Positions 28,890 through 54,720 of a stretch of DNA of 64,000 nucleotides are shown piece after piece (the first letter of the stretch is position 1; every line of letters begins with the position of its first letter). This DNA comes from Octopus sinensis (lineage: Eukaryota), in assembly GCF_006345805.1 (NCBI RefSeq), contig NC_043011.1, positions 21,588,464-21,652,463 on the forward strand, given 5' to 3'. The notes beneath the pieces were generated by a model. That model was given only the letters and a program-made list of their open reading frames with translations, had not been told where the DNA came from and did not search any database. A program made the position numbers and the translations under genes.

Positions 28890-29640
28890 TTGTTTACCCA
28901 TGTTGACTATTGATTAGCAGCTTACTTTGTCTGTGGTTATGCCACATCGGCTTCTGCTAGGGAATAGGGCAGCCTCATTGCTCTGCTATTCGCAGTCCGC
29001 CCTCTCATCTTGCCCCCACCACTTATACCGGAAGTCTTTATCCTCTGATCGCTATCGGATGTCTTTCTCCTGAGCACCTCTAATGGCTTACTGTATGGAA
29101 CGTTTCCTCCATCCCTACTTAGTGTCTATCTCCTGTTGTATATACTGATTATGTAGCAAATAAAATGATAGTGTAGTGTATGCAGGTTGAAGGTTATTGT
29201 ATGCTTATGAGATCTGCCAAATGCAAGCCTTCTTTTCAGATACATAATGCTGCTGTCCCCCATCCCAGGGTCTTTCAGGCCCACACCTTCCACACCCTTA
29301 GAGTTGGCACACTTAATGTTGGCACATTGAAAGGTAGGTCTTATGAGATTGTTGGGACGCTTGAACGGAGACATGTAGATTTGTGCTGCATCCAAAAAAT
29401 AAAGTGGAGAGGAAGTTCTGCTAGGTTCCTCACAGGCAAAGATCATAAGTATAAGATTTTCTGGGTAGGGAACACTGATGGGGTTAGGGATGCAGATATA
29501 CTCTTTGTAGATAAATGGGTTGATAAGGTAATCGAGGTAGTCAGAGTCTATGATAGAATAGACTCTGACTACCTCTTAGTAAGTAGGAAGGCAGACAATC
29601 ACAAATCCCTTCGGAGTTTGATAGAAGGCTTGCTCTTCCT
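28890..29640 (+). mobile_element. RTE-clade LINE 5' fragment (5' UTR + APE endonuclease)
   Basis: LRVGTLNVGTLKGRSYEIVGTLERRHVDLCCIQKIKWRG...YKIFWVGN, the N-terminus of an apurinic endonuclease of RTE-type elements. Confidence 0.8.
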
Positions 29641-30299
29641 TCCGTAGAAGAAAAAATTCAAATCAGACCATGTTAACACCAAAAATTATTTACATCAAAA
29701 AGGTGCTTTTTTTCTATGAAAATCTCTATTTTTTACGACTTTTTTACTGCTGTGTCACCATTTTTCAGTGTATTTCAACCAGAAAAATGTTCACTTAAAG
29801 AGAATAACAAACTACATAATGCAAAATTTTTACTTTTTGAAAATTCCAATTCTAAAGGGTCAAAAAGAAAACAAGCCCGAGCAATGCTGTGCTATACTGC
29901 TAGTTGTTAAATTCAAAACTTCAGGACACAAAGAAACGACTCCACTTGTTTAGAAACAACTTATAAAACAATGATGACCTATTTACTATAAAAAGCAATT
30001 CAACCTCATGATTTGGTATACTAAACATTTTTACAAAACTGGCTTTCAAAGAAAGAAGTTAGTGAACGTGCTTTAACATACAATATAAGAAAACATTGCA
30101 TCACCTTGAACTCAAAACTATTAAATTTTACTGCTGTTTCTTTCAACCAAAACTTTCACTCAAATAAGTGAATAAAAATATTAGGTATAAAAGCCCATTC
30201 ATGTGTATAATTTTGGGGCTGATTTGTAATGGATTCTTTGAATGTAATATGTGTGTGTATTTCTTTTATCTAAAGTTGAGGTATATTAATCGTTTGTCG

Positions 30300-31570
30300 T
30301 AGACCCGTTAAGAAGTGGCCTGTATTTTGTAATAAAGAGTTTTCTCTTTACTTATCGTTGTCTCGGGGTTGTATCGTCCTAAATTGGTAGAGGGGGAAAA
30401 TCCTGAACCCTGGTGTTTTGTTGTTGGCGCAAGTATCTATGTGTTGGCTGAAAGCTATTTTCTGTTTTGGGAATTTTTATCTGGGATCTGTGCAGGGCCA
30501 TTCTTTTACGCAAACTATTTTTTGTTTGCCTATGTACTGCTCTTGACACCCGGAGCAGTTTAGTGAGTATATTAGTTCTCAAGCACATGTGAAGTTGCTT
30601 TTCACTGTAAACATTGTCCTGTTTGAAGGAGAACTCTGATCCTCAATTAGATAATCGCATATCCCGCATTGGGGTCTTCCACATTTTTTTACTGTCGACT
30701 CTGTGTTGAAGAGTGAATTCGGGCTTGTTTAGGAGACTTTTCATAGATTTAGGCTGTCTCTTGCTTTTTATGATCGTGTGTGTTTGGAGGATTGTGTTCA
30801 TTCTGTGGTCTTTTTTAGGAAGGGTATGTTGTGGAGGATGGTGCCGAAGGCTTCGTTTATTGAGAGTTGTGTGTGGAGATGTATGGTAAGGCTTTTGGTC
30901 GTAAGTTTTCTTTGATTTGGGATGTCTCAGTTCCTTGATGTTAAGTTGAATGCACTTGTCAATAAGTGAAGGTGGATAGTTCCTGGTGATAAGGGTATCT
31001 TTTAGTTCTTGTAGTCGTGTGTCTCTGGTGTTTGCATTAGAGACTATAGTGCATATCCTTTTTGCTAGATTGAAGGGGATATTCATCCTGGTGTCTGGGG
31101 TGGCATGAATTGAATGGAAGATATTGCTTAGAATCTGGTAGGCTTATAATATATGTCTGTTTCTATTACATTATTAGCTTTCTTAATGAGGATATCGAGG
31201 AAGGGGAGTTGTGCTGGCTATATTCCATCGAGAATTGGATTTTTACGTCCAGTCCGTTTAAATTTTCTTGGAATTCTATGAGTTTTTCTATATTTTTATG
31301 CCAAAGAATGAAACAGTCATCTAGATATCTCTTCAAGTTGTTTTCTATGTAGATGAGAAAGGGCTGCCATATCTTTCTAGAACTTACGATACAGACTGAT
31401 CTCTAGATATCCTATGACTAGGTTGGCAAAGGAGGGGGCCATTCGTGTACCCATCGCAGTCCCCGATTTTTGTCGGTAGAGTTGTCATTGAAGGCAAAGA
31501 AGTTATTTTCCAGGATGATTTTAACTCCTTCTATCACAATTCTTTTTTGATGCGATGTGGTAGTTCGTTG
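30300..31570 (-). mobile_element. Penelope-like retroelement fragment (RT C-half), truncated by the assembly gap
   Basis: IVIEGVKIILENNFFAFND, RT domain-5 (GTRMAPSF), DSKQYLPFNSCHP and NIPFNLAKRICTIVSNANTRD; related to the 43447-45240 element. Confidence 0.85.
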
Positions 31571-31670
31571 NNNNNNNNNNNNNNNNNNNNNNNNNNNNNN
31601 NNNNNNNNNNNNNNNNNNNNNNNNNNNNNNNNNNNNNNNNNNNNNNNNNNNNNNNNNNNNNNNNNNNNNN
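31571..31670. other. Assembly gap (100 N)
   Basis: Run of n characters. Confidence 1.
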
Positions 31671-33426: not shown

Positions 33427-33432
33427 TTTAAT
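33427..33432 (-). terminator. Candidate polyadenylation signal (ATTAAA) for the selenoprotein mRNA
   Basis: Plus-strand tttaat, 27 nt downstream of the SECIS. AATAAA alternatives occur further down near 32315, so this is not unique. Confidence 0.35.
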
Positions 33433-33458: not shown

Positions 33459-33540
33459 TTACTGGTTATTCATCAGAATTTATCCAACTCTGGTCGATAT
33501 GTTTAAACCAGTGTTTTCATAGCCAGAAAATAACCAGTAA
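33459..33540 (-). promoter_or_regulatory. SECIS element in the 3' UTR of the selenoprotein gene
   Basis: Minus strand: helix I TTACTGGTTATT/AATAACCAGTAA (12 bp perfect); core ATGAA...GGAT (U.U, G.A, A.G, A.G quartet); helix II AACACTGGTT/GACCAGAGTT; unpaired AAA exactly 11 nt after ATGAA. Confidence 0.88.
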
Positions 33541-33689: not shown

Positions 33690-34205
33690 AGGAAATTATT
33701 AGTGCTGAAGAGTCTATGAGAGAGGGAAATAGGAATAAATAGGTATTAGATAACATAGTACAGAGATGTAGATTTTGAGGAGGGTTGGAAATTGAGAGAA
33801 GAGTGAACGTGAAAGATATAGGGAATGAGGGGGAAAACAGAGGGAATAGGGATTTAAAGAATGGAAGGAGGAATATTGATGAAAATAGATGAGTGAAAAA
33901 AAGTGGAGGAACAAATATAAAAATATATAAAATACCATAGAAAGAAAGCAAGAAAAGAAAAAACTAAGAGAGAGAGAGAAATAAAAGAAGATCCAGAAAT
34001 TGGTTGAATGAAGTAGATAGATGGGGAAAAAAGATAGAAAGAGAGACTGAAGTGAGTAAAAGGATGTAGAGAAAAAGAGAAATTCAGAGAATGGAGATGA
34101 GACAGAAAGTAGGAAAGTGAAAAAAAATAGAAGGGATAACATGGATAGGAAATAGGAGGCAAGGAAGTGGGGAAAGGAAAAGAAAGAAAATATAGAAAAG
34201 AAATC
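33690..34205 (+). repeat. ~500-bp purine-rich low-complexity tract
   Basis: Strong A/G skew on + without a fixed unit; lies between the selenoprotein stop codon and the SECIS. Confidence 0.9.
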
Positions 34206-34850
34206 CACATGGTTAAGCCAAATAGTACTTCATCAGACAGTAGTTAGATCACTCAATTAATTGAAGTGATAGATTTTTATGCTGAGCAACAAGAAGTAAT
34301 ATATGAGAAGCAAATGAATGGAAGCTTTCAAAATTCACAATGTATCTCCTTATATAGTCAACTCCAGTTGATATATTTGAGGTCACATGGAATTAAGGAT
34401 GGCCTTTTCCACCAAACATAAACATCAATATCACATCAGACTGCTCAGCATTAACCAGAAATTGTAGCCACCATCTACAACATACATTGTTAAGCAAGCA
34501 TCATAAAATATCTCACCAATGAACAAGGTTAACTCTTTCAGTCAGCTGAACAGCCTTGTTGTTTTTGTTGTTCTAACTGGTTAGAGAAATATTGCTTCAG
34601 TGAAAATGTAAGGGTAGCAACATCTACTGGATAAATATCTTCACCATAATGAGACAGGTTGTGCAACTTATCATGATACTGGGATGTGAGCCAGTCCATA
34701 TCTATATGTCTGAACCATGAGGATTTAGAAAGGAAGTATGATAGCCAAGGCCTTTAATTAATTAATTAGAAAGAGAGAAGTGACTTTAATATCAGAATTT
34801 AAAGTGTAACATAATTGCAGCAGATATAGAGTAGAGCAGCCCAAATTGGT

Positions 34851-34907
34851 TTAATGAACTGCTTTGAGTTGCTTTCCGTCCTGAGCATCTTTTATACACT
34901 TCAGAAT
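34851..34907 (-). CDS. MIEN1: Rdx-family selenoprotein exon 4 (terminal coding exon)
   Basis: Poly-T tract then ttacag|ATT. Reads ILKCIKDAQDGKQLKAVH*, which aligns with the MIEN1 LIEAIRRASNGETLEKIT segment. Total protein is 87 aa. Confidence 0.85.
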   Translation of the reverse strand: MLKCIKDAQDGKQLKAVH

Positions 34908-35689
34908 CTGTAAAAAAAAAAAAAAAAGCATAAAACACTATAGAAATTTAAAATGAATACAAGAAATTGATTTTTCTTTTTAAAAATAAGAATTTACTGT
35001 AATCAATTCTAAATTTACAGGGTATAAAATATGATCAAGAATAATAGTAGTGAAGTTGTGTCAGCACCAAGACTATTCTGGAGTACAGTATCATCATCAT
35101 CATCATCGTTTAGAGTCCGCTTTCCATGCTAGCATGGGTTGGACGGTTAAACTGGGGTCTGGGAAGCCAGAAGGCTGCACCAGGCCCAGTCTGATCTGGC
35201 AGTGTTTCGACAGTGTAACGCCAACCACTCCATGAGTGTAGTGGGTGCTTTTTACGTGCCACCAGCACAGGTGCCAGACGAGGCTGGTAAACGGCCACGA
35301 TTGGATAGTGCATTTTATGTGCCGCCAGCACTGAAGCCAGACAAGGCTAGCAACAGCCACAATCGGATGGTGCTTTTTACATGCCACTGGCACAGAGGCC
35401 AGTTGGGGCAGCGCTGGCAATGGCCACGTTCAGATGGTTCTCTTACGTGCCACCGGCACTGGTATCACAGCTACAATTTCCATTGATGTTGATCGATTTC
35501 GATTTCAAGTATGTTTAGTTAAAATATGTCACAGCTGGCTCAGTCACTAAATATCCTATATATTGTCACTGGTGCTTCACTGTATACATGACAAAGATAC
35601 TTATGTCTCAATACACCCATTCACTTGAGTTCTAATAGCAACAAAACAATCCAGCACAAACCCTATCTTGCTCAATAAAACAGTCTCCT

Positions 35690-36070
35690 GGAAACTATCA
35701 AGAAATGTAAAACCAGACAAATGCCCACCATCAGACATCTACAATACCTTGAACATCTTTCTTCCCTGGGCTTGCATACATTAAATCACTGACTAGGTAG
35801 ACACCTACAAGGTTATCCACCATCTTCCCAACAACAACCTTGAACACCTTTTTGACTTCCATATGTCTAACACTCGTGGACATGCTTGCAAAAGTGAAAA
35901 AACAACACAGCACCCATGACTTTCAGAAACATTTTTCCATGCTGCATCATTTGTTACATCCTTCAACACTTCTATGCTTCCTGAAATTCACCGACAAAAC
36001 ACCTCATGTCCCCACCCCCACCTTTTTTTTAATAATTCATTCACTGTTCACCTGTTCACTTCCTGTTATT
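35690..36070 (+). mobile_element. CR1-like LINE 3' end
   Basis: Decayed L..LGL..L..RR...DL....K...LF.....TRGH..KV.K......Q.HFS pattern typical of CR1 RT C-termini. Confidence 0.6.
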
Positions 36071-38478
36071 TGTATATGATACTTATATATTACTGAATTT
36101 TAAAATTTCTAATATGTCGGACTGTATAGATATAAACTAGTATATAAGATTTGCATGTGCTTGGTCTATCTTTGAATTTTGTGGTGTTCCTGTGGTTGTT
36201 TTCTCCTATTGCCTCCCCTTGGATAAAAAAGTATATACATATATATATATGACTGCGGCCATGCTGGAGCACCGCCTTTAGTCGAGCAAATCAACCCCGG
36301 GACTTATTCTTTGTAAGCCCAGAACTTATTCTATCGGTCTCTTTTGCTGAACCGCTAAGTGACGGGGACGTAAACACACTAGCATCGGTTGTCAAGCAAT
36401 GCTAGGGGGACACAGACACACAAACACACACACATACACACATATATATATATATACATACGACAGGCTTCTTTCAGTTTCTGTCTACCAAATCCACTCA
36501 CAAGGCATTGGTTGGCCCAGGGCTATAGCAGAAGACACTTGCCCAAGATGCCACGCAGTGGGACTGAACCCGGAACCATGTGGTTGGTTAGCAAGCTACT
36601 TACCACACAGCCAAACAGTCATGTACACAACTTGGACGGACACATACCAGTACACGGACATAAGTTAACATGCACATACACATGTACACACAGACACAGA
36701 CGCATCTACCCATTCTCCTAGATACTCACATACATACGTAGCATATAAGTACAAACATACATACATACATGCGTATGGGCATACACACGTACATACGCAC
36801 GTACATGTACACACATACATACGCACATGCATACGTGCGCATATACATACATACGCACATACATACGTACGTGCATACACACATACATACGTGTGTGTGT
36901 GTGTGTATATATATATATAACCTGAACTAACTAGATGTAAGGGGAAAAAAAAAAGATAAGTAATAGTAAAAGAAAAGTTTTGAGATATAGAGATAAGTGG
37001 CTGATAATAGGTTTTAGAGTTTTGTCGTGGGGGTAAGAGTCGTAAATCACTTCCTAGTTTCGGCGGGGGTGGGAGGTTGAAATTTGATATTGTTGTGATG
37101 AGTGGTCAGTCTACACCTATCCACCACTACAGGTTTATAGCTTTAATTTTATAGTGTGTGTGTGTGCGTACATATACACACATACATACATACATACATA
37201 CATACACACATGTGTACGTACGTACATACATACATATATGCATGCATACATACATGTATATAACGAACCAACCATTACTTTCTCAGATGCAGCACAGATT
37301 TTTGTCAGTGAACAGGTCGCGGTCTTAAAGCGACGAAAATATTTTGACAAATTAAACTTAAATGTTGAAGTTAATTGAACGGCTTGATATATTCTCTTTT
37401 TTTTTTTTTTTTCTCTTTTACTTGTTTCAGTCATTTGACTGCGGCCATGCTGGAGCACCGCCTTTAGTCGAGCAAATCGACCCCGGGACTTATTCTTTGT
37501 AAGCCCAGTACTTATTCTATCGGTCTCTTTTTGCCGAACCGCTAAGTGACAGGGACGTAAACACACCAGCATCGGTTGTCAAGCAATGCTAGGGGGACAA
37601 ACACAGACACACAAACACACATACATATATATATATATACATATATACGACAGGCTTCTTTCAGTTTCCGTCTACCAAATCCACTCACAAGGCATTGGTC
37701 GGCCCGGGGCTATAGCAAAAGACACTTGCCCAAGATGCCACGCAGTGGGACTGAACCCGGAACCATGAGGTTGGTTAGCAAGCTACTTACCACACAGCCA
37801 CTCCTGCGCCTATACATATATACATATATATTATAGACACACACACACACAGATTATATACAAGGAGTTTTCATCAACTGATATAATGTAACAGGTATGG
37901 TTTACCACTAAAGCTCCAGCCTGAACTGCAATTGAAAAATGTGGTGTTGAGACTGCCTATCAAAGGCATCTTTTAATTTTAAATCTCTCTCTCTCTTTCT
38001 ACGTGTATATATGTATATAGATGTATCATTATCATCATCATCATCCTCATTTAATGTCTGTTTTCCATGCTAGCATGGGTCGGATGGTTTAACTGAGAAT
38101 TGGTAAGCCGGGGAACTGCACCAGGTTCCAATCTGGTTTCAGCATGGTTTCTATGGCTGGGTGCCCTTCGTAACGCCAACCACTCCAAGAGTGTTGTGGG
38201 TGCTTTTTACGTGCCGCCAGCACAGGTGCCACTTACATGACGCTGGCATTGACCATGACTACGATCTCACTCGGCTTGACAGGTCTTCTCCAGCACGGTA
38301 TATCACCAACAGTCTTGGTCACCTGTCACTGCCTCTGTAAGGCCCAACATACAAACACACACATGCGGGTGGGAAGCAAACTTCTTAACCTCACAGTCAT
38401 GCCAAAAAATAAATAAATAAAGAGAATGCACATCTAAAACCAGAAATGATAAAAGATTAATGAAATAGAAAAACTGAC

Positions 38479-38555
38479 CTCTTCGTGGTCTGGGTATGAG
38501 CCACTTTTGAGCCTTGAATGAACCCCGCGGTGATTGATAGTGACTTCAAAGGCAC
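38479..38555 (-). CDS. MIEN1: Rdx-family selenoprotein exon 3
   Basis: Acceptor atttcag|GT GCC TTT GAA, donor GAG|gtcagt. Reads (G)AFEVTINHRGVHSRLKSGSYPDHEE, the Rdx GxFE(I/V)xxNxxxxxSK/R motif. Confidence 0.92.
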
Positions 38556-39689
38556 CTGAAATATAAGATGGCATCAATTAGAAATATTTACATGTGTAAT
38601 GAATGAAAAACAAGTAATAATATTAACCAATAAAATTATGAAACCCATAGCTGGACATATTTTCCCCGAACATGGAAAACAAACAACATTGCTTGTATGA
38701 CAGTGATGCTAAGGTATAACCATCACACAATAGCAAAGCAAGAAAATACAAACACAGACATGTATATGACAAGCTTCTTTCAGTTTCCATCATTTAAATT
38801 CACTCACAAGGCTCTGGTCAGCTTGAGGCTATAGTAAAAGACACTTGCCCAAGGTACTACAGAGTGGAACTGAATCCAAAAACATCTGGTTAGTAAAAAA
38901 AACTTCTTAACTACACAGGCATGTACTTATAAATTGAATTCTAAATGTAGATATTACGCAAAATTTAAAATATACATTGGCATATGAACAATATTTGAAG
39001 TTAAAATAAATATTTTTGTCATTTGAAAATCAACTGCTATACTCAATGTGAGAAATAGCCTTCAAATTTAGATAAATATTCAAATATTTACATAGTTTCA
39101 GCATTTCAGGCATGTAGTAAATAGTCTGGAATTTTGATTAGACATAAATTATGATAAGCAACCTGTATATAATAAATATAGAATGTACATAACATTCACA
39201 TCAGTCACTGAAACACTAACGTATGAACCCCATCACTCATCTTCTCATGTAGTGCCTTTGCCTTTTGGCAGCTTCTTCAATAACATTTTCACTCTTCAAT
39301 AATGTTAGTACTTATAAAATCCTTGTAATTTCTGATAGATTTGATGTTCTAAAATATTTTCATTTTCTCTACTAGTTTTATCAAGCATTTCCAAGCCGAA
39401 TGCTTTTATTGTTTGTTTTATCAATGGTAACTCCTTAATTCATGCCAAAGATGTTTCATTTAACAGTAAATAAACCAAATAAATATTATCTCACATTATG
39501 ATAATTTTGTCTATGAAGCTCCATTTAGCTGCTCCACTTAAATGAATCTAACATCTTGTCTTCTCTATTGTCAGTCCATCAGCATCATTCTGGTTGTAAA
39601 CATCATTTCTCATTGTAAACTACACACCAAATGGTTTTTCATTTTAAACCTTTAACATTCATATTACTCTGTCAACTGTTGAGACACCC

Positions 39690-40015
39690 TTTGGTTATGA
39701 CTGGCTGTGGCATTGCACCTAGGAAGTTACCCTCCAGGCACAAGTCCGGGTAAGGTTGTTTATGGAAGACCAGCAGTCGCCCATGCATACCGGCCTCCCC
39801 TCTCCACGCCACCAGTGTTATCTAAGGGAAAGGCAAAGGCCGATATAGCTTGGCACTAGTGACATCGCAACTCATTTCTACAGCTGAGTGAACTGGAGCA
39901 AGTGAAATAAAGTGTCTTGCTCAAGAACACAACACGCAGCCTGGTCTGGAATCCAAACTCACAACCTCACAATCGTAAGCTCGACGCTCTAACCACTGAG
40001 CTATGCACCTTCACA
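39690..40015 (-). mobile_element. tRNA-derived CORE-like SINE
   Basis: Minus strand AGGTGCATAGCTCAGTGGTTAGAGCGTC A-box head followed by GTGTTCTTGAGCAAGACACTT domain. Confidence 0.7.
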
Positions 40016-40377
40016 ACCGTAACATTTAATTATTTACATTGTTTTGAAATAATCATGCCATCATGCCATAGCTTTGAGATTTCAATAATTGTTTATTTTT
40101 AGAATGACATTGTAGATAAGGTGTGCTAGACAAGATGTAGCCAGTACAAACAAAACTAGTATGGTTGGTTTAAATGCTAAAAGGCTGAAGATTATTACTC
40201 TAACAAAATACATCTCTGCTACAGAACTAACAACTCTGCCCAATACCCAGAGGTTCCCATTGCCTTACCAAGGTATGGAACTCTAATTTTTCATACATAA
40301 TACCTTGATATATTACTATTTATCTCAGTGATCGGTGAGAATAATGCAAAATGGATATATAACAGAATAAATCTTAC

Positions 40378-40478
40378 CTTTACTGGGATTCACAGTGCTT
40401 TTTATATTAACTTCAGGAAAATTTGCGAGGATCTTACTAGTGAGAGCCTCCATCCTGTTCTGTCCACCTCATGCCTGA
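40378..40478 (-). CDS. MIEN1: Rdx-family selenoprotein exon 2, contains in-frame TGA (Sec13) at 40471-40469
   Basis: Acceptor ttttacag|T CAG GCA TGA GGT GGA ... AGT AAA G|gtaaga. Reads (C)QA-U-GGQNRMEALTSKILANFPEVNIKSTVNPSK(G) and completes the CxxU motif; phases 2 and 1 match both neighbours. Confidence 0.9.
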
Positions 40479-40984
40479 CTGTAAAATAAAAGTATATACA
40501 TTTTTAGAATAAAGACAATGACAACAGGTTATGGAGATATATATAGCAAGAGTAAATTTTAAGAGATAAACTGATATGTCATATTAGTTCAAGTGAAAAA
40601 AGGAAATAATCACTTTTCCTAGTTGATGTATGTATGTGTGTGCCTATATCAACAATTTAACATCAATTTTTCCTTCTTTTCATGGGTCTAAAGGAAATCA
40701 TTGTTGAAGCAGATATTCTATAACCAGATGCTGCTCTTCCTGACATCAACTTTCAATGGTTTCAAAATAAAGTAATATTCACTCGATGCCGGATGTCTTG
40801 CACAACAGACTTGAAAACAAACATCACACACATGAGAGTAATGATCATTTGTAAAACAAAGAATTGTCAGGTCAAAACATGTGTGTGTGTATACATGTGG
40901 GTTTATATATAAATACATGTATAAATATAAATACATATATTCAGAAACATATACATATGTACATATGTATATATACATATAAAC

Positions 40985-41058
<74 letters not shown>

Positions 41059-41837
41059 TATACTAGCAGTATAGCCCGGCTTTGCTCAGGATTAAGTTAG
41101 GATTATTAAGCTAATCAAGCTCTTTATTTCAAAGCAAACTAAGTAACATCGACGTCAAATTCGAGTGAAATCCGTTGAAATTGGTAAACTTTTGGCTGCA
41201 ATTTTGCTGACAATTTGATTGGGAAATCCCATAAGGAATCGGTTTCTTGATTTTTTCCACTCATCGATTGTTTTTCCTTTTTTTCTTTTCATGTAACCCC
41301 ACAGCAAGGAAAATAGAACACCCGGAGTGGTTGGCATTAGGAAGGGCATCCAGCTGTAGAAACTATGCCAGATCAGATTGGAGTCTGGTTTGCCAGACCT
41401 CAGTCAAATCGTCCAACCCATGCCAGCATGGAAAGCGAATGTTAAATGATGATGATGATATATATATATATACATATATACATATACATACATAGATATA
41501 TAGATACCTATATATATATATATATTATATATATATATATATACACATACATATATATATAGATAGCTATATATATATACATATATATACATACATCATC
41601 ATCATCATTATCATCGTTTAACGTCCATTTTCCATGCTAGCATGGATTGACGGTTCAACTGGGGTCTGGGAAGCCAAAAGGCTGCGACAGGCCCAGTCTG
41701 ATCTGGCAGTGTTTCTACAGCTGGATGCCCTTCCTAACGCCAACCACTCTGAGAGTGTAGCGGGTGCTTTTTATGTGCCACTTGCACAGGTGCCAGACGA
41801 GGCTGGCTGCCAGACGAAGCTGGCTGCCAGACGAGGC

Positions 41838-41875
<38 letters not shown>

Positions 41876-41877
41876 TT

Positions 41878-42121
41878 AGAGAAAAACCTCTATTAAGCAA
41901 TTCAATAGTGAAAGACGTTATTCACACCATATAGAAAAAAATAAATATACTATAAAAACCTTATTCTAAAAATCAATAAAGTACATAAACAACAAATAGT
42001 TACTTATTGTTTATGTACTTTATTGATTTTTAGAATAAGGTTTTTATAATATATTTATTTTTTTCTATATGGTGTGAATAACGTCTTTCACTATTGAATT
42101 GCTTAATAGAGGTTTTTCTCT
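41878..42121. repeat. Near-perfect 244-bp palindrome
   Basis: ~115-bp arms (AGAGAAAAACCTC...AAACAA / TTGTTT...GAGGTTTTTCTCT) with one visible mismatch and a ~14-nt loop. Confidence 0.95.
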
Positions 42122-42219
42122 CAATTATATACATAAATTATATATTGTAAAATTTGATTTAGAATTGCTAAATTAAATTTTTCCTTGTAAGTTTGGAATT
42201 ATATTCCTTACTATTATTA

Positions 42220-42244
42220 TTATACATATACATACATATATAAT

Positions 42245-42278
<34 letters not shown>

Positions 42279-42593
42279 CACACAATATATATACATATAC
42301 ATATATACATATATATATACATATATACATATATATATATACCTATATATATACATATATGTATGTATTTATATATATATATATATATGTATGTATATAT
42401 ATATATACATATATACATATATATACATATATATATATACATATATGTATGTATATATATATGTATGTATGTATATATATACATATATACTATATATACA
42501 TATATATACATATATAATATATATACATATATGTATGTATATATATATACATATATAACATATATATACATATATGTATGTATATATATATAC

Positions 42594-42624
<31 letters not shown>

Positions 42625-42628
42625 AATA

Positions 42629-42690
<62 letters not shown>

Positions 42691-43030
42691 TATATAATAT
42701 ATACATATATATATATGTATACATGTATGTATATATCTATACATATAAATATATACATATACATATATACATATAGATATATACATATATATATAACATA
42801 TATATATATATATATACATATATATAAATATAAACATATATATATACATATATATAAATATACACATATATATACATATATATATACACATATATATACA
42901 TATATATAAATATACACATATATATACATATATATAAATATATACATATATATGTACATATATATATATACACATACATACATATATATATACATATGTA
43001 TATACATATATACATATGTATATACATATT
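42220..43030. repeat. ~800-bp compound (TA)n/(CATA)n microsatellite; representative of dozens in the window (e.g. 975-1390, 3160-3580, 14680-15060, 21820-22560)
   Basis: Direct reading; source of the YI/VC/HT-repeat ORFs in the ORF track. Confidence 0.97.
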
Positions 43031-43061
43031 CTTACATATATATCGAAATCGAATTGAACCA

Positions 43062-43390
43062 GCCAGGATCTGGTGGTACATAAAAAGCACTATCCGACTC
43101 GTGGCCGATGCCAGCGCCACCTCCACTGGCTTCCATGCCGGTGGCACATAAAATACACCAATCCAACCGTGGCCGTTGCCAGCCTCGCCTGGCACCTGTG
43201 CAGGTGGCACGTAAAAAACACCCACTACACTCACGGAATGGTTGGCGTTAGGAAGGGCATCCAGCTGTAGAAACATTGCCAGATAAGACTGGAGCCTGGT
43301 GCAGCCTTCTGGCTTCCCAGATCCCCGGTCGAACCGTCCAACCCATGCTAGCATGGAGAACGGACGTTAAACGAGGATGATGATGATGAT
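43062..43390 (+). mobile_element. RTE-related short element family C with (GAT)n tail
   Basis: Repeated GGTGGCACRTAAAAAGCACC modules, TTAGGAAGGGCATCCAGCTG and CCAACCCATGCTAGCATGG...GTTAAACGATGAT tail. Other copies at ~8660-8980, 10540-10800, 22111-22311, 56780-57030 (+) and 35091-35475, 38025-38340, 41595-41830 (-). Confidence 0.8.
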
Positions 43391-43446
43391 ATCCATAATA
43401 TATATAACATATAAATACATATATAACATATATACATATATACATG

Positions 43447-45240
43447 TCAAAATAAGCAACAAGGATATCCAGAAATAATGCAGTATGATCGTTTCATGCA
43501 ACTCCATAACTGACCCCATAAGACTAAAAATCAGTGGCAGGTAGAGTATTCTTGATAATCTTAGTAACTTCTCTGCTGAAGTAGAGACATGTTCTTTGTC
43601 TATCTCCTTAACTTCTAGGAGATTTTAGGTATATTTATACTAATATATCCATCTGTTCTAATTTAATTAATTTCTGTGTCTTTGTGCAGCTGAGGATTGT
43701 TTTACATTTTAAATTGATGTAATGCTAGCATTGTTCAATTAAATGGAGTTGCATGAAATGATCATACTGCGTTACCTCTGGATATCCTTGTTGCTTATTT
43801 GATTTTATTTGATAAAAGTTGGTAATGCGTGCATATTAAGATGTGTTCTGTATTTTTCAATGAAAAAAGTTTCTTTATTCAAACATTCTTGTGAAGAGAT
43901 TGTGTCTTTGCACTGGTAGAAGCGGAAGGCTGTGAAATTTGATTTGATGTTATCTGCACATTTTTGTATAAGTTCATTGAGAAGAATTTGCCTGTATTGT
44001 GGGTAACGGATTTGCTCTTTATGTAGAATGGTTCTCCTTCACAAGGTTATACTCGTCTGTCCAATATTGTTATGTCCACAACCCGAGCAGGTTATTACAA
44101 CTTCTGTTCTTTTTTGAAAAGGAAATTCGAGCCTTCAAGTACATTGGGGCAGGTTCCACAGTTTGGTTGTCCACATTTTTTAACCGTTGGTTTCGTGGTT
44201 GTTTTGTAAAGCTTCGCATTTGTTAGTAGTCTCTTTAGCGATTTGTGTTGCTCTTTGCATTTGATGAGTTTGTGTGTTTTCAGGATGTTGTTCATTTTTG
44301 GATCTGTAGTTAGTAAAGGAAGATTTTGCACAACAGTGTTGAATGCTTCACTGTTTCTGGGGTTGTGTGTTGATATAAATAGTGGTGTTTTGAGATGAGG
44401 TGTGGTGTTATGTTTTGTTGTTCTTAGTGTTTTTATGTCTAATTTTCTGGCACATTTAATTCCCGCGTCTATAAGTGAGGGTGGATATTGTCTTTCACTA
44501 AGCGTTGTTTTGAGGTCTTGAAGACGAAGGTCTCGAGTTGTTCTATCAGACACTATTGTGCAAATCCTTTTTGCCAAATTGAAAAGGATGTTTATTTTGA
44601 TGTGTTTTGGGTGGCATGAGCTAAAAAGGAGACATTGTTTTGAGTCAGTTGCTTTATAATAGATACCAGTTATGATTTGGTTGTTGACTTTTTTTATCAT
44701 GATGTCTAAAAATAGGAGCTGTTCTTTGTTATATTCCATTGTGAATTGAATGTTACTATTTATATCATTTAGTGTTGATTTTAAATCCTAAAGCTTGTTG
44801 ATGTTCTCCTTCCAAATAAAACAGTCATCCAGGTATCTTTTACAATTTTCTCTTATGTAAAGGTAAAATGGATAACCATATTTCTGAAATGATACTTTAT
44901 ATAAAGTGAATTCAAAGTAACCCATTATGAGGTTCGCAAGAACAGGGGCTGCTTTCATTCCCATCACAATGCCACATTCCTAACAATAGTATGTGTCATC
45001 AAATAGAAAATAATTGTTCTGAAGTATAAATTTTAAAGATTCAATAATAAAGATCTGATTTATGCGTTCCGGGAGTACTTCAGGGTACTTTTCCAACCAG
45101 AATTTAAGTGCTTTTATTCTATAGTCATGGGGGATGTTGGTATTAAGATTGATAACATCAAGGGTAACCAATATTGCCTCTTCATTAATTGTTTTTGGTA
45201 GGTGTTCTAGCATGTCTAAATCGTCTCTAATGAAACTTTT
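43447..45240 (-). mobile_element. Penelope-like retroelement (RT + GIY-YIG), decayed, inside selenoprotein intron 1
   Basis: Minus-strand RT motifs LVTLDVINLNTNIPHD, GTRAAPVLANLIMGY, RYLDDCFIW and FLDIMI...HPKHIKINILFNLAKRICTIVS; GIY-YIG ITCSGCGHNNIGQT; ~58-bp inverted terminal segment (43449-43506 vs 43744-43800). Confidence 0.9.
43686..43770 (+). ncRNA. Type I hammerhead-like motif in a Penelope terminus
   Basis: GCAG-CTGAGGA-[58 nt]-GAAA-TGATCA-TA-CTGC: canonical cores, palindromic stem III ATGATCAT, stem I GCAG/CTGC; stem II region long and not cleanly closed. Confidence 0.5.
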
Positions 45241-45280
45241 GATGTATATATACATATAAATATACATACATATATATATA

Positions 45281-45341
45281 CATATCTCGCCTTTACCTTC
45301 GAAATGCGGAGTAGACGAAACGGAGGCGGCTGAAGAAAGGG
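45281..45341 (+). ncRNA. Rearranged hammerhead-like motif at a Penelope junction
   Basis: TAT-C-TCGCCT, CCTTC-GAAA-TG, AGGCGG-CTGAAGA-AAGGG: same strand order as the 62312 motif with different, compensating stems. Confidence 0.55.
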
Positions 45342-45556
45342 AAATTTCCTTGTGTCTTGTACCCTGTTTTTTCATTGTTTAAAAAATGTCCGTTTCCATG
45401 GTTCTGTTTCTATGTTTTCGTTTCTCATTGTGTTCAACGTTTTTTCGGTGTCCTGAACCTATATATGCATGTATATATACATATAGATGTAGGTACGTAC
45501 ATATATGTATATATATATGCATATGTTTTATTTATTATTTTATTACATATAAATAT

Positions 45557-45588
<32 letters not shown>

Positions 45589-46534
45589 ATATATATATAT
45601 ATATACACATACATAAATATACATGTGTGTGTGTATATGTGTGTACATACATACACTTACGCATAGAAATTCATAAAGATAGCTAGCTAGATAGAACGGC
45701 AGACACGATAAATGTTGAAAATCTTTTTTTAAGAAAATGCAAGCATACATATATATAAACTTAGTGTAAGATAACCAACGAAATATATTTATAAATAGTC
45801 ATTTGCTTTCATGTACATTTCACAAAAGCTAGTAGCAGGTCATGCATGAAACCTTTATGAAATTCAGAACAAACTTCAAAGTTGTACTTGTTTGACAAGT
45901 ATTTAGTTGCTTAGAGACGGGCTATTTGACCTGCAGCATTTGCGACATGAAAGAACCATTTGGGTTTCAACAACTGTGTGAAAAACGAATATGACAAAAA
46001 AATTTGCGCAAACGAACCTGGGGGTGGGGAGAGAACTTTCGGAAAATTCACAAGATCTGATTTTTCCGTCATAACTTTCGGGAAAATGGGTAGATATTGA
46101 AGGGAGTTGTTTATTGCTATGTTCCATTGTGAATTGTATGTTGCTATTTCTCTTTTACTTGTTTTAGTCATTTGACTGTGGCCATGCTGGAGCACCACCT
46201 TTAGTCGAGCAAATCGACTCCCAGACTTATTCTTTGTAAGCCTAGTACTTATTCTATCGGCCCTTTTGCTGAACCACTATATCACGGGGACGTAAACACA
46301 ATAGCATCGGTTGTCAAGCAATGTTGTGGGGACAAACACAGACATACATGTATATATATGTATATATATATATATATATTACAAAATTATGAAGTTATAT
46401 CTTGAGTGACAATAACGCTCAAGATATACAACGGACTGGAAATAGAAGTGCTCCAATGAGCTGTATACACTTTTTTGTCCAAGGGGCGGCCTCCCCTTGG
46501 ACATAAAAGTGTATATATATATATATTATATATA

Positions 46535-46574
<40 letters not shown>

Positions 46575-48186
46575 GACATATATATATATACGTCGTATAT
46601 AATATACGACAGGCTTCTTTCAATTTCTGTCTACCAAATCCACTCACAAGGCTTTGGTCAGTCCAAGGCTATAGTAGAAGACACTTGCCCAAGGTGCTAC
46701 GCAGTGGGACTGAACCTGGAATCATGTGGTTGGTAAGCAAGCTACTTACCACACAGCCACTCCTGCACCTAGCTACATACCACACAGCCACTCCTGCACC
46801 TAGCTACTTACCACACAGCCACTCCTATATATATTTGTTGAAAAATTGAAATTTTACAAACAAATTTTTTTCAGAATCCTAATCTTCGTATTTTATTTAC
46901 GTATTTTGCAAAAAAAAAAAAAATTTCAGGAAAAAGTGAAAAATGAAGAGGGGGAGGGGCTGAAGTTCTGAAAATGCGATTTTTGAAAATTTGTTTTCAG
47001 AATCGGATCCTCCATAACCAAAACCGTGGGATTCCGTAAAAAAAAAAAAATCAACGTAAATCCATTTTCCCGAAAGTTATGACGAAAAAATCGGATCTTG
47101 TGAATTTTTCAAAAGTCCTGTCCCCACCCCCAGGTTCGTTTGCGCAATTTTTTTTTCTGTCATATTATTAACACCCAGCAGGTTAGGTTGTTTTTTGTTT
47201 TTTTTTGTTAATGGGTGAAGATCTTTATCTTAACCGAACTATTGTACCTATAGAAGACCACGCAGTGTGCTATTCTGTTCACTTTATATACACACACATT
47301 TTTTATTAATAGACTATTGTGTCAAAATTTTCACTGCAGTTCTACAACTGGGGTACTTGGGAACAGTTCTAGGATGTCAATAGGGTTAAGTAGACACGTC
47401 AACTGAATCTCTTTCTCTCTCTCTGTTAGTTCCCCACCATCGCTTGACAACTCGTTTTGGCGTGTTTACATCCTTGTATCTTAGCGGATCGGCAAAAGAA
47501 AACCCTACAGAATAGGTACCAGGCTTTAAAAAAAATATTAGGGTCGATTCATTCGACCAAAAATTTTCAAGGTGTAACCCAGCTTGGCCACTGTCAAGTG
47601 ACAGAAACGAGTAAGAGATAAAAAATTACATACAGCAAGTATAATATATGGTAAATATATGGTAAATGGTAAATATATGGTAAATGGTAAATCACACCCC
47701 AAGCGTTTAGAAACCTCTACGTTTTCGCTTGTTTGCTGGCAACAGTCAAATTTCCCTTAAACTACCATCTTAAAAAGGTAAAACGTCGCATTAGATAATG
47801 TAGTTCATGTTTGCGTTGTCTCTCAAAATGATGAGATGGTCATAGTTGGAACGCTTTTGATCATAGTCGTCTGCTTGATCGGTGTCGACTTGTAGCTTGA
47901 CAACTTTGTATTTCAGTTGCTTTCATAGTTAGAAAAGCCGCACCTAGGCTAGTCTATACCTTGGAACAGAAATCTAAGTTACATAAACAATATTTTTTTA
48001 TAGGCAAAATATAAACATACATATATAAATATAAAATGTAAATTCAAAATAAGTTAACGAACGACGATATTGAAATAAACCAATGCTCTGCACATCAGGG
48101 TTTTTGGGTTTTTTTTTTTTTTTGCTTGTTGGTTGGTTTGTTCCCCCACCGACCCACCTCACCCCCAAAAATATATAATTACTTAC

Positions 48187-48215
48187 CAGTACTCTATCAA
48201 CACTTCAACAACCAT
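48187..48215 (-). CDS. MIEN1: Rdx-family selenoprotein (SelW2/MIEN1-like) exon 1
   Basis: Minus strand aaagATGG (good Kozak context): ATG GTT GTT GAA GTG TTG ATA GAG TAC TG|gtaagt = MVVEVLIEY plus TG of Cys10; 29 coding nt, perfect donor. The symbol is a best-family assignment from remembered similarity. Confidence 0.88.
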
Positions 48216-52709: not shown

Positions 52710-54720
52710 CTCAATGTATGTTATCCAAATCAAAAGAGGAAAGTGTTACTCATATAGTAAGTCAATGTAGCATGCTGGCACAGAAAGAATACAATAAAAG
52801 ACATGACGACCTAGGAATTGACCGTACTGATAAATGGTATGAACATGAACCTAGTAAAGTACTAGAAAGTAACAAATGTAAAATGTTGTGGGACTTTAAC
52901 ATTCAAACTGACAGAGTAATACAAGCTAGAAGGCCTGATTTAGTAGTAGTAGACAAAGAGAATAGAAAATGCCAGATAATTGACTTTACAGTTCCAAATG
53001 ATGAAAAAATCAATGTGAGAGGTATAGAAAAATAGCAAAGTACCAAGACCTAGCCCTTGAATTACCAACACTATGGAAAGTGCAAGTAAAATATATCCCA
53101 GTAGTTATAGGTGCATTAGGAACTATCCCTAAAGATTTGAACAGGTGGATAAAGGAAGTAGGCATAAAACCCAGTGTATTACAGCTCCAGAAAACAGTGT
53201 TATTAGGGACAGCTAGGATATTTAGGAGGGTTCTTGTCATCTAAGGTTACTTGTTGAAGCTCGTTGTTAGAAATTTTTCTATTCAAACAGTCTAATCTGT
53301 TGTGTGCATATGAATAAACAATAATGGACAGTATATACTTCGGAGCCGAAATGCTGATATAGACCAAGCAACAATCCATCAGTGGCTGAGAAGCTCAGGA
53401 CTGAAAGCAGAGACTGAAGATTTCATATTGGCGGCACAAGATCAAAGCTTGCTCACCAAAAACTACCAGGCTAACAGTCTTCAAAACGGTTCTGATCCTA
53501 AATGCAGATTCTGTGATAAATTTGACGAAACAATAGATGTTCTCATCTCGGGATGCCCTGTGCTGACACCAATTGAATGCAAAAATTTCCACGATAGAGT
53601 AGGACAGTATTTACATTGGAAAATATTTAAACACTACAAAATCAGCATTCTTGTTTACTGGTATGAACATCATCCTGAGCCAGACATTGAAGGTAAAAAT
53701 GTCACTATCCTCTGAGATTTTCCAGTCAACACCGACAGAATGATCCAGGCTAATCGATTAGACATAGTCATTAAAGACAGAAAATAAAATACTTGTAGGC
53801 CAATAGGTGTAAGTGTTCCCACTGATAAAAAAAATATCTGTAAAGGAATTTGACAAATTAAGTAAATATAAGGACCTGGAAATTGAAATACAAAAGATGT
53901 GACATTTTAAAGTGAGAACTGTTCTTGTTATTGTGGGTGCCCTAGATATGATAAGAAAGGGATGTCAAAAACATCTAGGTAATATCCCAGGAGAACCATG
54001 TCTCAATCCAAATGATTGTACTGACAAATACTGCCCACATCCTTAGAAAAACCCTATCATTTTAAATGTATGTGTTGTATTACATGAAGGTATTTCACTA
54101 CTGCCCCCTGTCACTTCCCCTTCCCAGGCTTTCAGTCATACTGTAACATCTCTTATCTTTCACTCACCCTAGGTTGCTGGGTGTGTCTTGGCAAGTGATT
54201 GTAACAAACATGCAGATTAAGAGAGTGGCAGGTCGGAGACTAGCAAAAGTTTCTGGGATTTCCCCAATCCAAACAGATCAGGTGCTAGAGCATAACAGAC
54301 CAGACCTAGTGGTGGTGGACAAGGTGTGCAACATATGCTATATAGTTGACACTGCATGCCCCTTTGACCCATGAATAGTCAAGAAGGAAGGTGGAAAGGT
54401 AAATAGATACAACCCTCTTAAGTACAAAATAGTTTGGCTATGGAAAACAAAAGTGAAGACAGTACCAATTATTGTTGGGTGCTTGGGAACAGTATCAGAA
54501 GGCATCAAAAGGAACATAAAGGAAATTGGAATAGAGTGCCCAGTAGAACTGTTACAAAAGGTTTGCCTCCTTGGCATGGCCAGAATAATCAGGAAAGTAT
54601 CAGATAGCTGAAAAGAATGAATAGCATGGTATCGTAGGCTGCAGGTAGTAAGCCTGCCATGCATGTAAGACTCCAGGAGATCCAATAAAACCTATGATAA
54701 AGAGATAATAATAATAATAA
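52710..54720 (+). mobile_element. Three tandem 3' fragments of R4/Dong-clade (restriction-like endonuclease) non-LTR retrotransposons
   Basis: CCHC-type C..C...ET..H..S.C and RHD motifs plus the PD..D-E.K endonuclease (RPDLVVVDK...IID..VP.D...K..KY.DL...W...PV.IGALG) occur at ~52710-53245, ~53340-54065 and ~54250-54612; ends in an (AAT)n tail at 54706-54720. Confidence 0.85.

What the first reader, a model, noticed from the sequence alone, without database searches (positions are those of the whole stretch)
34851..48215. Hidden four-exon selenoprotein gene (CxxU, SelW2/MIEN1-like) missed by ORF calling
Seen: four minus-strand exons with canonical splice sites and consistent phases (2,1,0) assemble MVVEVLIEYCQA-U-GGQNRMEALTSKILANFPEVNIKSTVNPSKGAFEVTINHRGVHSRLKSGSYPDHEEILKCIKDAQDGKQLKAVH (87 aa), with TGA at codon 13. 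Established: Rdx-family proteins (SELENOW, SELENOT, SELENOH, MIEN1) use an N-terminal CxxU/CxxC and a GxFE motif; vertebrate MIEN1 has Cys where SelW2-type homologues have Sec. Inference: this is a Sec-containing MIEN1/SelW2 orthologue that automated pipelines would likely truncate, start at the downstream Met (MEALT) or miss. U-GG instead of the usual U-G(Y/F), and HRG instead of G.L, are unusual.
Basis: partly seen in the sequence, partly recalled or inferred. Interest (0 to 1): 0.9.

Follow-up and report, generated by a model that had tools for sequence, protein, structure and literature searches.

The report
Unannotated octopus selenoprotein gene in cluster
The four-exon gene with an in-frame TGA is real: it is a small selenocysteine redox protein of the SELENOW2/MIEN1 family with its own SECIS element, but it is the most divergent, anchor-less copy in a four-gene octopus cluster, so it is a new member of a known family and not a new kind of gene.

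Summary
Four minus-strand exons (48215-48187, 40478-40378, 38555-38479, 34907-34851) have canonical splice sites and phases 2/1/0. They encode 87 aa with TGA at codon 13, and the product matches Pfam Rdx end to end (62.9 bits).

It is the only rule-passing SECIS in 128 kb. The genome (Octopus sinensis) has tRNA-Sec.

The protein is closer to human MIEN1 (E=2.9e-11) than to SelW (E=0.008). It is not "the" orthologue. It is gene A of a roughly 105-kb cluster of four paralogues (A-D), each with TGA plus SECIS. C and D keep the family's C-terminal CAAX prenylation box. A and B lost it through different premature stops, and the relic CAAX codons are still readable.

Public models of these genes are wrong. 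The O. vulgaris model of A has a false N-terminus; B and C are cut at the Met after Sec; C and D are fused into a chimera.

No transcript of A was found, and the species comparison is too shallow to prove selection, so a silent or decaying copy remains possible (about 20%). Novelty is modest.

The parts
48187..48215 (-). Exon 1 coding part: ATG MVVEVLIEY plus TG, the first two bases of the Cys10 codon. Donor GTAAGT.
   Evidence: It is the only minus-strand exon-1 candidate near gene A found by a pattern scan. An in-frame TGA lies 5 codons upstream of the ATG. The 5' context CGCAAAGATG is shared with paralogue B.
40378..40478 (-). Exon 2: completes Cys10, then QA-U-GGQNRMEALTSKILANFPEVNIKSTVNPSK plus the first base of Gly44. 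Acceptor TTTTACAG, donor GTAAGA.
   Evidence: Family HMM hit E=2.2e-6. Identical in O. vulgaris.
40469..40471 (-). In-frame TGA, the Sec codon 13 of the C-Q-A-U redox motif.
   Evidence: Aligns with the second Cys of human MIEN1 CEPC. The same TGA position is found in paralogues B, C and D and in cephalopod transcripts L027-L029.
38479..38555 (-). Exon 3: (G)AFEVTINHRGVHSRLKSGSYPDHEE. Acceptor TTTCAG, donor GTCAGT.
   Evidence: Family HMM hit E=1.3e-8. Identical in O. vulgaris.
34851..34907 (-). Exon 4 coding part: ILKCIKDAQDGKQLKAVH plus TAA (34853-34851).
   Evidence: Identical in O. vulgaris. Homologous to the last exons of B, C and D.
34824..34838 (-). Relic of the ancestral CAAX box, now untranslated: TGC TCT ACT CTA (C-S-T-L), followed by TAT where C and D have their TAA stop.
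   Evidence: Nucleotide alignment of the last exons of A, B, C and D.
34799..34823 (-). Proximal 3'UTR motif CTGCTGCAATTATGTTACACTTTAA. Its core is present in A, B and C at the same place; D has a looser copy. Role unknown.
   Evidence: It begins a proximal 3'UTR block homologous to B and C.
33459..33540 (-). SECIS element: 13-bp helix I, AUGA / GA quartet (core ATGA at 33520-33517), about 10-bp helix II, AAA apical loop.
   Evidence: Rfam SECIS_1 gives 21.4 bits, below the gathering score of 35. It is the only rule-based SECIS hit in 128 kb. Shuffles give 0.02 hits of this quality per 128 kb. RNAfold z=-4.36 with a SECIS-shaped centroid. It is homologous to the SECIS elements of B, C and D, with an invariant core and one compensatory pair.
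33427..33432 (-). ATTAAA, a possible poly(A) signal about 30 nt past the SECIS. This is an inference only.
   Evidence: Paralogue homology of the distal 3'UTR runs on to about 33149, so the true 3' end is not known.

Best explanation
Window 48215-33459 (minus strand) holds an intact four-exon selenoprotein gene, which I call gene A. It belongs to the SELENOW2/MIEN1 branch of the Rdx (thioredoxin-like) family in Octopus sinensis.

Mechanism, inferred from established eukaryotic Sec decoding: the UGA at codon 13 is recoded as selenocysteine, because the SECIS stem-loop in the 3'UTR recruits SBP2, eEFSec and Sec-tRNA. The product is an 87-aa protein whose C10-x-x-U13 pair forms a redox-active selenenylsulfide centre.

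Gene A is one of four clustered paralogues (A-D, about 105 kb) that arose by duplication within cephalopods. C and D keep the family's C-terminal CAAX prenylation box. A (and, separately, B) lost it through a premature stop. A is therefore predicted to be a soluble protein with a SelW-like layout, not a membrane-anchored MIEN1-like one. It has evolved fastest of the four.

Shown: the gene structure, domain, TGA position, SECIS, tRNA-Sec, the cluster, the CAAX loss and the misannotation. Inferred: expression, actual Sec insertion, solubility and redox function.
For: Gene structure and domain:
- Exact exon structure with canonical splice sites.
- Full-length Pfam Rdx match at 62.9 bits.
- The TGA aligns with Cys of MIEN1's CxxC; MIEN1 E=2.9e-11 against SelW E=0.0076.

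SECIS and Sec machinery:
- The SECIS at 33540-33459 is the only hit in 128 kb. The chance expectation is 0.02 per 128 kb, roughly 5e-4 for the right strand within 3 kb of the stop. Fold z=-4.4.
- tRNA-Sec(TCA) genes are present at up to 77.7 bits. SELENOT with TGA is present in the genome.

The cluster:
- Paralogues B, C and D have identical intron phases, a TGA at the same codon and their own SECIS elements.
- Spliced cephalopod transcripts of C- and D-type carry the in-frame TGA.
- The cephalopod clade has 99/88 support.

Signs of constraint on A:
- The SECIS is 83% identical between A and B or C, while synonymous sites differ at 58-66%. A's SECIS was therefore constrained for most of the time since duplication.
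- dN/dS is 0.50 for A-B and 0.35 for A-C.
- Exons 2-4 are identical in O. vulgaris.

CAAX loss: the relic codons are readable past the stops of A and B.
Against: - No transcript or protein record of gene A turned up in the 5.8-billion-protein collection, apart from the mis-modelled O. vulgaris P0001. C- and D-type transcripts from other cephalopods, and retrocopies of B, do exist.
- A has the longest branch: 0.72 against 0.09 for C.
- A has a turn motif (N-H-R) seen in 0 of 120 family representatives.
- A lost the CAAX box through a nonsense change.
- The only coding difference from O. vulgaris is non-synonymous (L6S).
- CDS against intron divergence is not significant: 1/264 against 1.56%, P=0.08.
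- The Rfam SECIS score is below the gathering threshold.
- Continuity of the 1.3-kb 3'UTR between the stop and the SECIS is inferred from paralogue homology, not from RNA.
Confidence: 0.74

Rival explanations
1. Gene A is a silent or decaying duplicate. It is structurally intact but no longer expressed, or no longer under selection, and the work of the family is done by C and D (and perhaps B).
For: - A has the longest branch in the clade.
- It has a unique N-H-R turn and the rare U-G-G.
- It lost the prenylation box through a premature stop.
- No A-type transcript or retrocopy was found, while such evidence exists for B, C and D.
- The single interspecies coding change is non-synonymous, and CDS against intron divergence gives P=0.08.
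Against: - There is no frameshift, internal stop or splice-site defect in 264 nt and six splice sites.
- The TGA is retained.
- The SECIS core is invariant and 83% identical to paralogues whose synonymous sites are near saturation.
- dN/dS is 0.35-0.50, not about 1.
- The proximal and distal 3'UTR blocks are still alignable with B and C, whereas the introns align only through shared repeats.
- The absence of transcripts is weak evidence, because the collection holds only one contig for each of the cephalopod transcripts found.
Confidence: 0.2
2. The TGA is a true stop. Either a 12-aa peptide is made or translation starts at Met19 (MEALT...), giving a 69-aa protein without the redox motif.
For: Annotation pipelines read the paralogues this way (P0115, P0256). 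No direct evidence of Sec insertion exists for this gene.
Against: - The sequence upstream of the TGA encodes the family's beta1 strand and first Cys (VEVLIEYC) in frame, across a conserved phase-2 intron.
- A SECIS sits downstream on the same strand.
- Homologues across animals carry Cys or TGA at exactly this column: 18 Cys and 29 TGA-as-W among representatives.
- A product starting at Met19 would lack strand beta1 and the active site.
Confidence: 0.04
3. The four exons are a chance assembly of open frames and splice-like sites.
For: None, beyond the general ease of finding GT/AG sites in AT-rich DNA.
Against: - Pfam E=3.3e-17 over the full domain.
- Identical exon architecture in three neighbouring paralogues.
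- Exons 3-4 are already joined in an independent O. vulgaris gene model.
Confidence: 0.01

Closest known systems
SELENOW2 / MIEN1 (formerly Rdx12) group of the Rdx family
   Same: - Best solved-structure match is human MIEN1 (2LJK), E=2.9e-11 over residues 3-85.
- N-terminal CxxU/CxxC, the G-A-F-E motif and a G-x-(F/Y)-P turn are present.
- About 90-100 aa.
- Sec in non-amniote members and Cys in amniotes and insects.
- Invertebrate members are reported to fall on the SELENOW2 side (PMC13134290).
- Sister genes C and D align end to end with MIEN1, including the CAAX box.
   Different: - Gene A has no C-terminal CAAX prenylation box. 84 of 134 family representatives end in C-x-x-x, and in A only untranslated relic codons remain.
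- It has U-G-G instead of U-G-Y/F, and N-H-R instead of N-G-x.
- There is no TRPM7-type neighbour as in vertebrate SELENOW2: no alpha-kinase domain on C15.
- My tree does not resolve SELENOW2 against MIEN1 affinity.
SELENOW (SelW1)
   Same: By my recollection of the mammalian protein, not tested here, it has the same overall layout: 87 aa, Sec at residue 13, soluble, no lipid anchor. It is in the same Pfam family.
   Different: Sequence similarity is much weaker (mouse SelW 2NPB, E=0.0076, 20 bits). Gene A derives from CAAX-bearing ancestors within the cephalopod cluster, so any likeness to SelW1 is convergent.
Mollusc SelW-family selenoproteins reported earlier (Lottia gigantea, 3 genes)
   Same: Several SelW-family selenoprotein genes in one mollusc genome, found only by dedicated selenoprotein searches (PMC3473315).
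   Different: In the papers I could search, nothing describes a cephalopod cluster or the CAAX loss.

Membership tests
Rdx family (Pfam PF10262) | Profile match above the curated cut-off over the whole domain | tested here: met
   62.9 bits against a cut-off of 22.6, E=3.3e-17, profile positions 2-74 of 74.
Rdx family (Pfam PF10262) | N-terminal CxxC/CxxU redox motif after strand beta1 | tested here: met
   V-L-I-E-Y-C10-Q-A-U13-G. The TGA aligns with the second Cys of MIEN1's CEPC.
Rdx family (Pfam PF10262) | Thioredoxin-like fold | not tested
   The spliced protein is not a contiguous translation of the window, so I did not submit it for structure prediction. The fold is inferred from sequence homology to 2LJK and 2NPB.
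Eukaryotic selenoprotein gene | In-frame UGA at a position where homologues have Sec or Cys | tested here: met
   Family representatives show 18 Cys and 29 TGA-as-W at this column.
Eukaryotic selenoprotein gene | SECIS element in the 3'UTR on the same strand | tested here: met
   The rule-based scan gives one hit in 128 kb, at 33540-33459, against 0.02 expected. Fold z=-4.4. The element is conserved in paralogues. Caveats: Rfam SECIS_1 gives only 21.4 bits against a gathering score of 35, and UTR continuity is inferred.
Eukaryotic selenoprotein gene | Sec-decoding machinery in the organism | tested here: met
   tRNA-Sec with anticodon TCA, at least 4 copies, up to 77.7 bits. Other TGA-bearing selenoprotein genes are present, such as SELENOT on C8694. 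SBP2, eEFSec, PSTK and SepSecS were not searched.
Eukaryotic selenoprotein gene | Transcription, splicing as predicted and actual Sec insertion | not testable with these tools
   No RNA-seq or proteomics for this species is reachable. No A-type ORF was found in the protein collection. C- and D-type transcripts from other cephalopods do show the in-frame TGA.
SELENOW2/MIEN1 subgroup | Closer to MIEN1/SELENOW2 than to SELENOW1 | tested here: met
   46.8 bits to MIEN1 against 20.0 bits to SelW. The nearest named homologues are annotated as 'migration and invasion enhancer 1'.
SELENOW2/MIEN1 subgroup | C-terminal CAAX prenylation box (functionally defining for MIEN1) | tested here: not met
   Gene A ends ...GKQLKAVH*. 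The relic C-S-T-L codons lie after the stop. Genes C (CTIL) and D (CTIV) meet this feature. Gene A is therefore a member by descent, but should not be called a MIEN1-type prenylated protein.
SELENOW2/MIEN1 subgroup | One-to-one orthology with vertebrate SELENOW2 or MIEN1 | tested here: not met
   All cephalopod copies form one clade (99/88), so A-D are co-orthologues. Deeper forks are unresolved. There is no TRPM7-type synteny.

The most novel reading that the evidence does not exclude
Genes A and B form a new soluble subfamily born inside a prenylated SELENOW2/MIEN1-type cluster. Two separate nonsense changes removed the lipid anchor, and gene A then converged on the 87-aa, Sec-13 layout of SELENOW1 while gaining an altered active-site neighbourhood (U-G-G, N-H-R). 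This would be a natural experiment in which a membrane-anchored selenoprotein was repeatedly turned into a cytosolic one in cephalopods.
Probability: 0.3. Interest if true: 0.5.

Novelty: new member of a known kind. Interest (0 to 1): 0.38.

Why it matters
It adds a correctly modelled selenoprotein gene, and in fact a four-gene cluster, to octopus genomes. Every public model I could see for these genes is wrong: truncated at the Met after Sec, given a false N-terminus, or fused into a chimera. That is a concrete correction for cephalopod annotation and for counts of mollusc selenoproteomes.

Biologically, the cluster shows step by step how a prenylated MIEN1-like protein can lose its anchor, because the relic CAAX codons are still readable. 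It also gives paired anchored and un-anchored Sec paralogues for testing what prenylation does in this poorly understood family.

It does not reveal a new mechanism or a new kind of gene. UGA recoding through a SECIS and the misannotation of selenoproteins are both well known.

Tried and rejected
1. Rfam over 22 kb was swamped by low-complexity miRNA hits. It was only informative once narrowed to the 3' region.
2. The word-based search with gene A alone found only P0001, so no close annotated homologue or transcript ORF exists in that collection.
3. I first took the C4 hit (L003) for a second functional gene and searched 30 kb for its missing exons. It spans the intron positions of gene B and is interrupted by a TA repeat, so it is a processed retrocopy of B. 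The C10 copy is the same kind.
4. Comparing O. sinensis with O. vulgaris as a test of selection is inconclusive. Introns differ at only 1.56% and the CDS at 1/264, P=0.08.
5. The SECIS search in the cephalopod transcripts L027-L029 found nothing. The contigs end less than 0.9 kb after the stop, while the genomic SECIS elements lie about 1.0-2.6 kb downstream, so this is uninformative.
6. TRPM7-type synteny as in vertebrate SELENOW2: there is no alpha-kinase domain on C15.
7. The large ORFs in the window (44098-44787 and others) gave no Pfam hits. By eye they look like degraded retroelement pieces.
8. My first dN/dS run used a mis-set exon boundary for B and is discarded. One search is the corrected run.
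10. The tree does not resolve SELENOW2 against MIEN1 affinity: only 99 columns were usable, many forks are open, and the bootstrap had not converged.


Full report
**Observation**

The window is G000:C15:21588464-21652463 of a 2.72-Gb genome. I identify the genome as Octopus sinensis. A RefSeq protein named 'migration and invasion enhancer 1-like [Octopus sinensis]' lies on a contig of 67,901,367 bp, which is exactly the length of C15.

Read base by base, the exons are:
- Exon 1: CDS 48215-48187, donor GTAAGT.
- Exon 2: 40478-40378, acceptor TTTTACAG, donor GTAAGA.
- Exon 3: 38555-38479, acceptor TTTCAG, donor GTCAGT.
- Exon 4: CDS 34907-34851, poly-T ACAG acceptor, TAA at 34853-34851.

The phases are 2, 1, 0. 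The total is 264 nt, giving 87 codons plus the stop, and the TGA at 40471-40469 is codon 13. An in-frame TGA lies five codons upstream of the ATG.

**Is it a gene?**

With U written as C, the product matches Pfam Rdx over the whole profile, at 62.9 bits against a cut-off of 22.6 (E=3.3e-17). Among solved structures the best match is human MIEN1/C17orf37 (2LJK, E=2.9e-11, residues 3-85). The TGA sits opposite the second Cys of CEPC. Mouse SelW scores only E=0.0076.

**SECIS and Sec machinery**

Rfam's best hit in the 3' region is SECIS_1 at 33530-33470 on the minus strand. It scores 21.4 bits, below the gathering score of 35.

I wrote a rule-based scanner with these requirements: (A/G)UGA-N, an 8-12-bp helix II with at most one mismatch, unpaired AA, N-GA, and a helix I. 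It finds exactly one site in both strands of the window. That site has a 13-bp helix I. Dinucleotide shuffles give 1.69 core-level hits and 0.02 hits with helix I of at least 9 bp per 128 kb. That is roughly 5e-4 for the correct strand within 3 kb of the stop.

The element folds with z=-4.36, and its centroid has the SECIS shape. The genome carries tRNA-Sec(TCA) genes at up to 77.7 bits. It also carries other TGA-bearing selenoprotein genes, such as SELENOT.

**Context: a four-gene cluster**

Following an O. vulgaris hit (P0115), I found that gene A is the first of four paralogues within about 105 kb. Coordinates below continue the window numbering along C15.

| Gene | Strand | Landmarks | SECIS |
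|---|---|---|---|
| A | - | ATG 48215, TAA 34851 | 33540-33459 |
| B | + | ATG 73842; exon 2 82042-82142 (C-DA-U-GGWKEM); stop 84576 | 86669-86732, Rfam 27.6 bits |
| C | - | ATG 100864; exon 2 about 94726; ends ...RSNSRCTIL* at about 92635 | 90064-90005 |
| D | - | exon 2 at 136823 (C-NS-U-GY); ends ...TSTGCTIV* at about 115885 | about 114921 |

All four genes share the three intron positions and phases. Over 288 kb (both strands), my scanner finds only the SECIS elements of A, C and D. B's SECIS is found by Rfam.

The four SECIS elements are homologous. In the alignment of the A, B and C elements, AUGA, AAA and GA are invariant, and 22 pairs are kept with one compensatory change and several wobble changes.

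Short RNA-seq-derived contigs from other cephalopods carry C-type and D-type mRNAs with the coding sequence already spliced and the TGA in frame (L027-L029). The family is therefore expressed as selenoprotein mRNA in cephalopods.

**Place in the family**

A sensitive profile search returned 1125 relatives. Many are non-vertebrate, with TGA read as W at the Sec column, and most have a C-terminal C-x-x-x box. The named ones are insect Cys forms annotated 'migration and invasion enhancer 1', plus a Capsaspora protein.

The literature states that invertebrate genes of this group fall on the SELENOW2 side and that MIEN1 arose in jawed vertebrates (PMC13134290; see also PMC3316567). It also reports three SelW-family selenoproteins in the limpet Lottia (PMC3473315).

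In my tree the cephalopod sequences form one clade (99/88). D-type is sister to the rest, and A pairs with B (95/49). The end branches are 0.72 for A, 0.47 for B and 0.09 for C. So A-D are co-orthologues of the vertebrate genes, and A is the most derived. Deeper forks are unresolved.

**Loss of the anchor**

C aligns with MIEN1 to the last residue, with CTIL opposite CVIL. Aligning the last exons at nucleotide level shows the old CAAX codons surviving beyond new stops:
- A: ...V H * T N L G C S T L Y
- B: ...K E * V C U T L *
- C: ...E R S N S R C T I L *
- D: ...E E T S T G C T I V *

The stops in A and B are at different codons. The losses are therefore separate events, or at least separate mutations.

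The rare U-G-G occurs in 1 of 47 representatives but is shared by A, B, C and a C-type transcript. A's N-H-R turn is unique among 120 representatives.

**Is gene A under constraint?**

Against O. vulgaris (L008), exons 2-4 are identical. Exon 1 has one non-synonymous change (TTG to TCG, L6S), at a position that also varies among the paralogues. The SECIS has one change, in the apical loop. Introns differ at only 1.56%, so 1/264 gives P=0.08, which is inconclusive.

The paralogue comparison is more telling. dS is 1.1-1.6 and dN/dS is 0.35-0.50. Introns align only through shared repeats. The proximal 3'UTR and a distal block containing the SECIS still align at about 70-73%, and the SECIS itself is 83% identical. 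This argues that A's SECIS and UTR were constrained for most of the time since duplication, and that the stop and the SECIS lie on one homologous 3'UTR. It cannot exclude recent silencing.

**Annotation**

- P0001 (O. vulgaris) is exons 3-4 of A behind a false N-terminus.
- P0115 is B started at the Met after Sec.
- P0256 (O. sinensis RefSeq) is C started at the Met after Sec.
- P0259 is D's tail fused to C's head, ending at C's TGA.
- No O. sinensis protein for A appeared.

**Verdict**

Gene A is a real, intact and previously mis-modelled selenoprotein gene of a known family. It is new as a member, and interesting mainly for the cluster and the anchor loss. Expression and Sec insertion remain unproven for gene A itself. 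I give 0.74 to a functional selenoprotein gene, 0.20 to a silent or decaying copy, and the remainder to the TGA-stop and chance readings.

Noticed in passing
Outside the window: G000:C15:21662305-21675195 (+), continued window coordinates 73842-86732: Paralogue B is a 108-aa Rdx selenoprotein (C-DA-U-GG). It lies head-to-head with gene A, with the start codons 25.6 kb apart, and has its own SECIS (Rfam 27.6 bits). Like A, it has no CAAX box. The O. vulgaris model P0115 starts at the Met after the TGA.
   Followed up: yes
Outside the window: continued coordinates 90005-100864 (-) and about 114900-136823 (-) on C15: Paralogues C (99 aa, C-QS-U-GG, ends CTIL) and D (C-NS-U-GY, ends CTIV) each have a SECIS. 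RefSeq truncates C to 78 aa (P0256). O. vulgaris P0259 is a D/C chimera. Exon 1 of D was not located.
   Followed up: partly
G000:C4:69459650-69459937 (L003) and G000:C10:50378777-50378917: These are intronless copies of gene B that span its intron positions, so they are processed retrocopies. The C4 copy keeps the TGA and is cut off by a TA microsatellite; the C10 copy has an internal TAA. They show that B's spliced mRNA was present in the germ line.
   Followed up: partly
window 34799-34823 (-), and the same position in B, C and D: A 3'UTR motif (CTGCTGCAATTATGTTACAC) sits shortly after the stop. It is conserved in A, B and C, with a looser copy in D, although the proteins are only about 45-57% identical. 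Its role is unknown; it may be a regulatory site.
   Followed up: no
window 33700-34210 (-): A CT-rich, low-complexity stretch of about 500 nt lies inside the presumed 3'UTR of gene A, between the two blocks that align with B and C. It is probably an insertion specific to A.
   Followed up: no
window 28081-28292: A long, nearly perfect hairpin matches a plant miRNA model on both strands (about 88 and 85 bits, far below the gathering score of 230). Its arms contain telomere-like CCCTAA/TTAGGG runs. It looks like a foldback or MITE-type repeat, not a miRNA gene.
   Followed up: no
window 36247-36613, 37406-37816, 46145-46771; continued coordinates 79767-80185, 83520-83895: A repeat family of about 400 bp, SINE-like by its size and copy number, occurs several times in the introns of A and B. 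Copies are up to 96% identical.
   Followed up: no
window 44098-45378 (-), 30646-31143 (-), 29177-29644 (+), 53314-53712 (+): These open frames of 130-230 aa have no Pfam match. By eye they resemble degraded retroelement (reverse transcriptase or endonuclease) remnants. One of them sits in intron 1 of gene A.
   Followed up: partly
window 36668-37300, 42176-43100, 45450-45680: Long TA/TG/CA microsatellite tracts in the introns of gene A give many spurious miRNA-family hits in Rfam.
   Followed up: no
G000:C9495:201053-201235 (-) and G000:C8694:334681-334803 (+): C9495 holds a fifth SelW-family exon with an in-frame TGA (...STS-U-GYLSKAKK...SSFEVLIDGKLIHSKL...), on an unplaced scaffold. C8694 holds SELENOT.
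   Followed up: partly
window 31571-31670: An assembly gap of 100 N lies about 1.8 kb beyond the SECIS.
   Followed up: no
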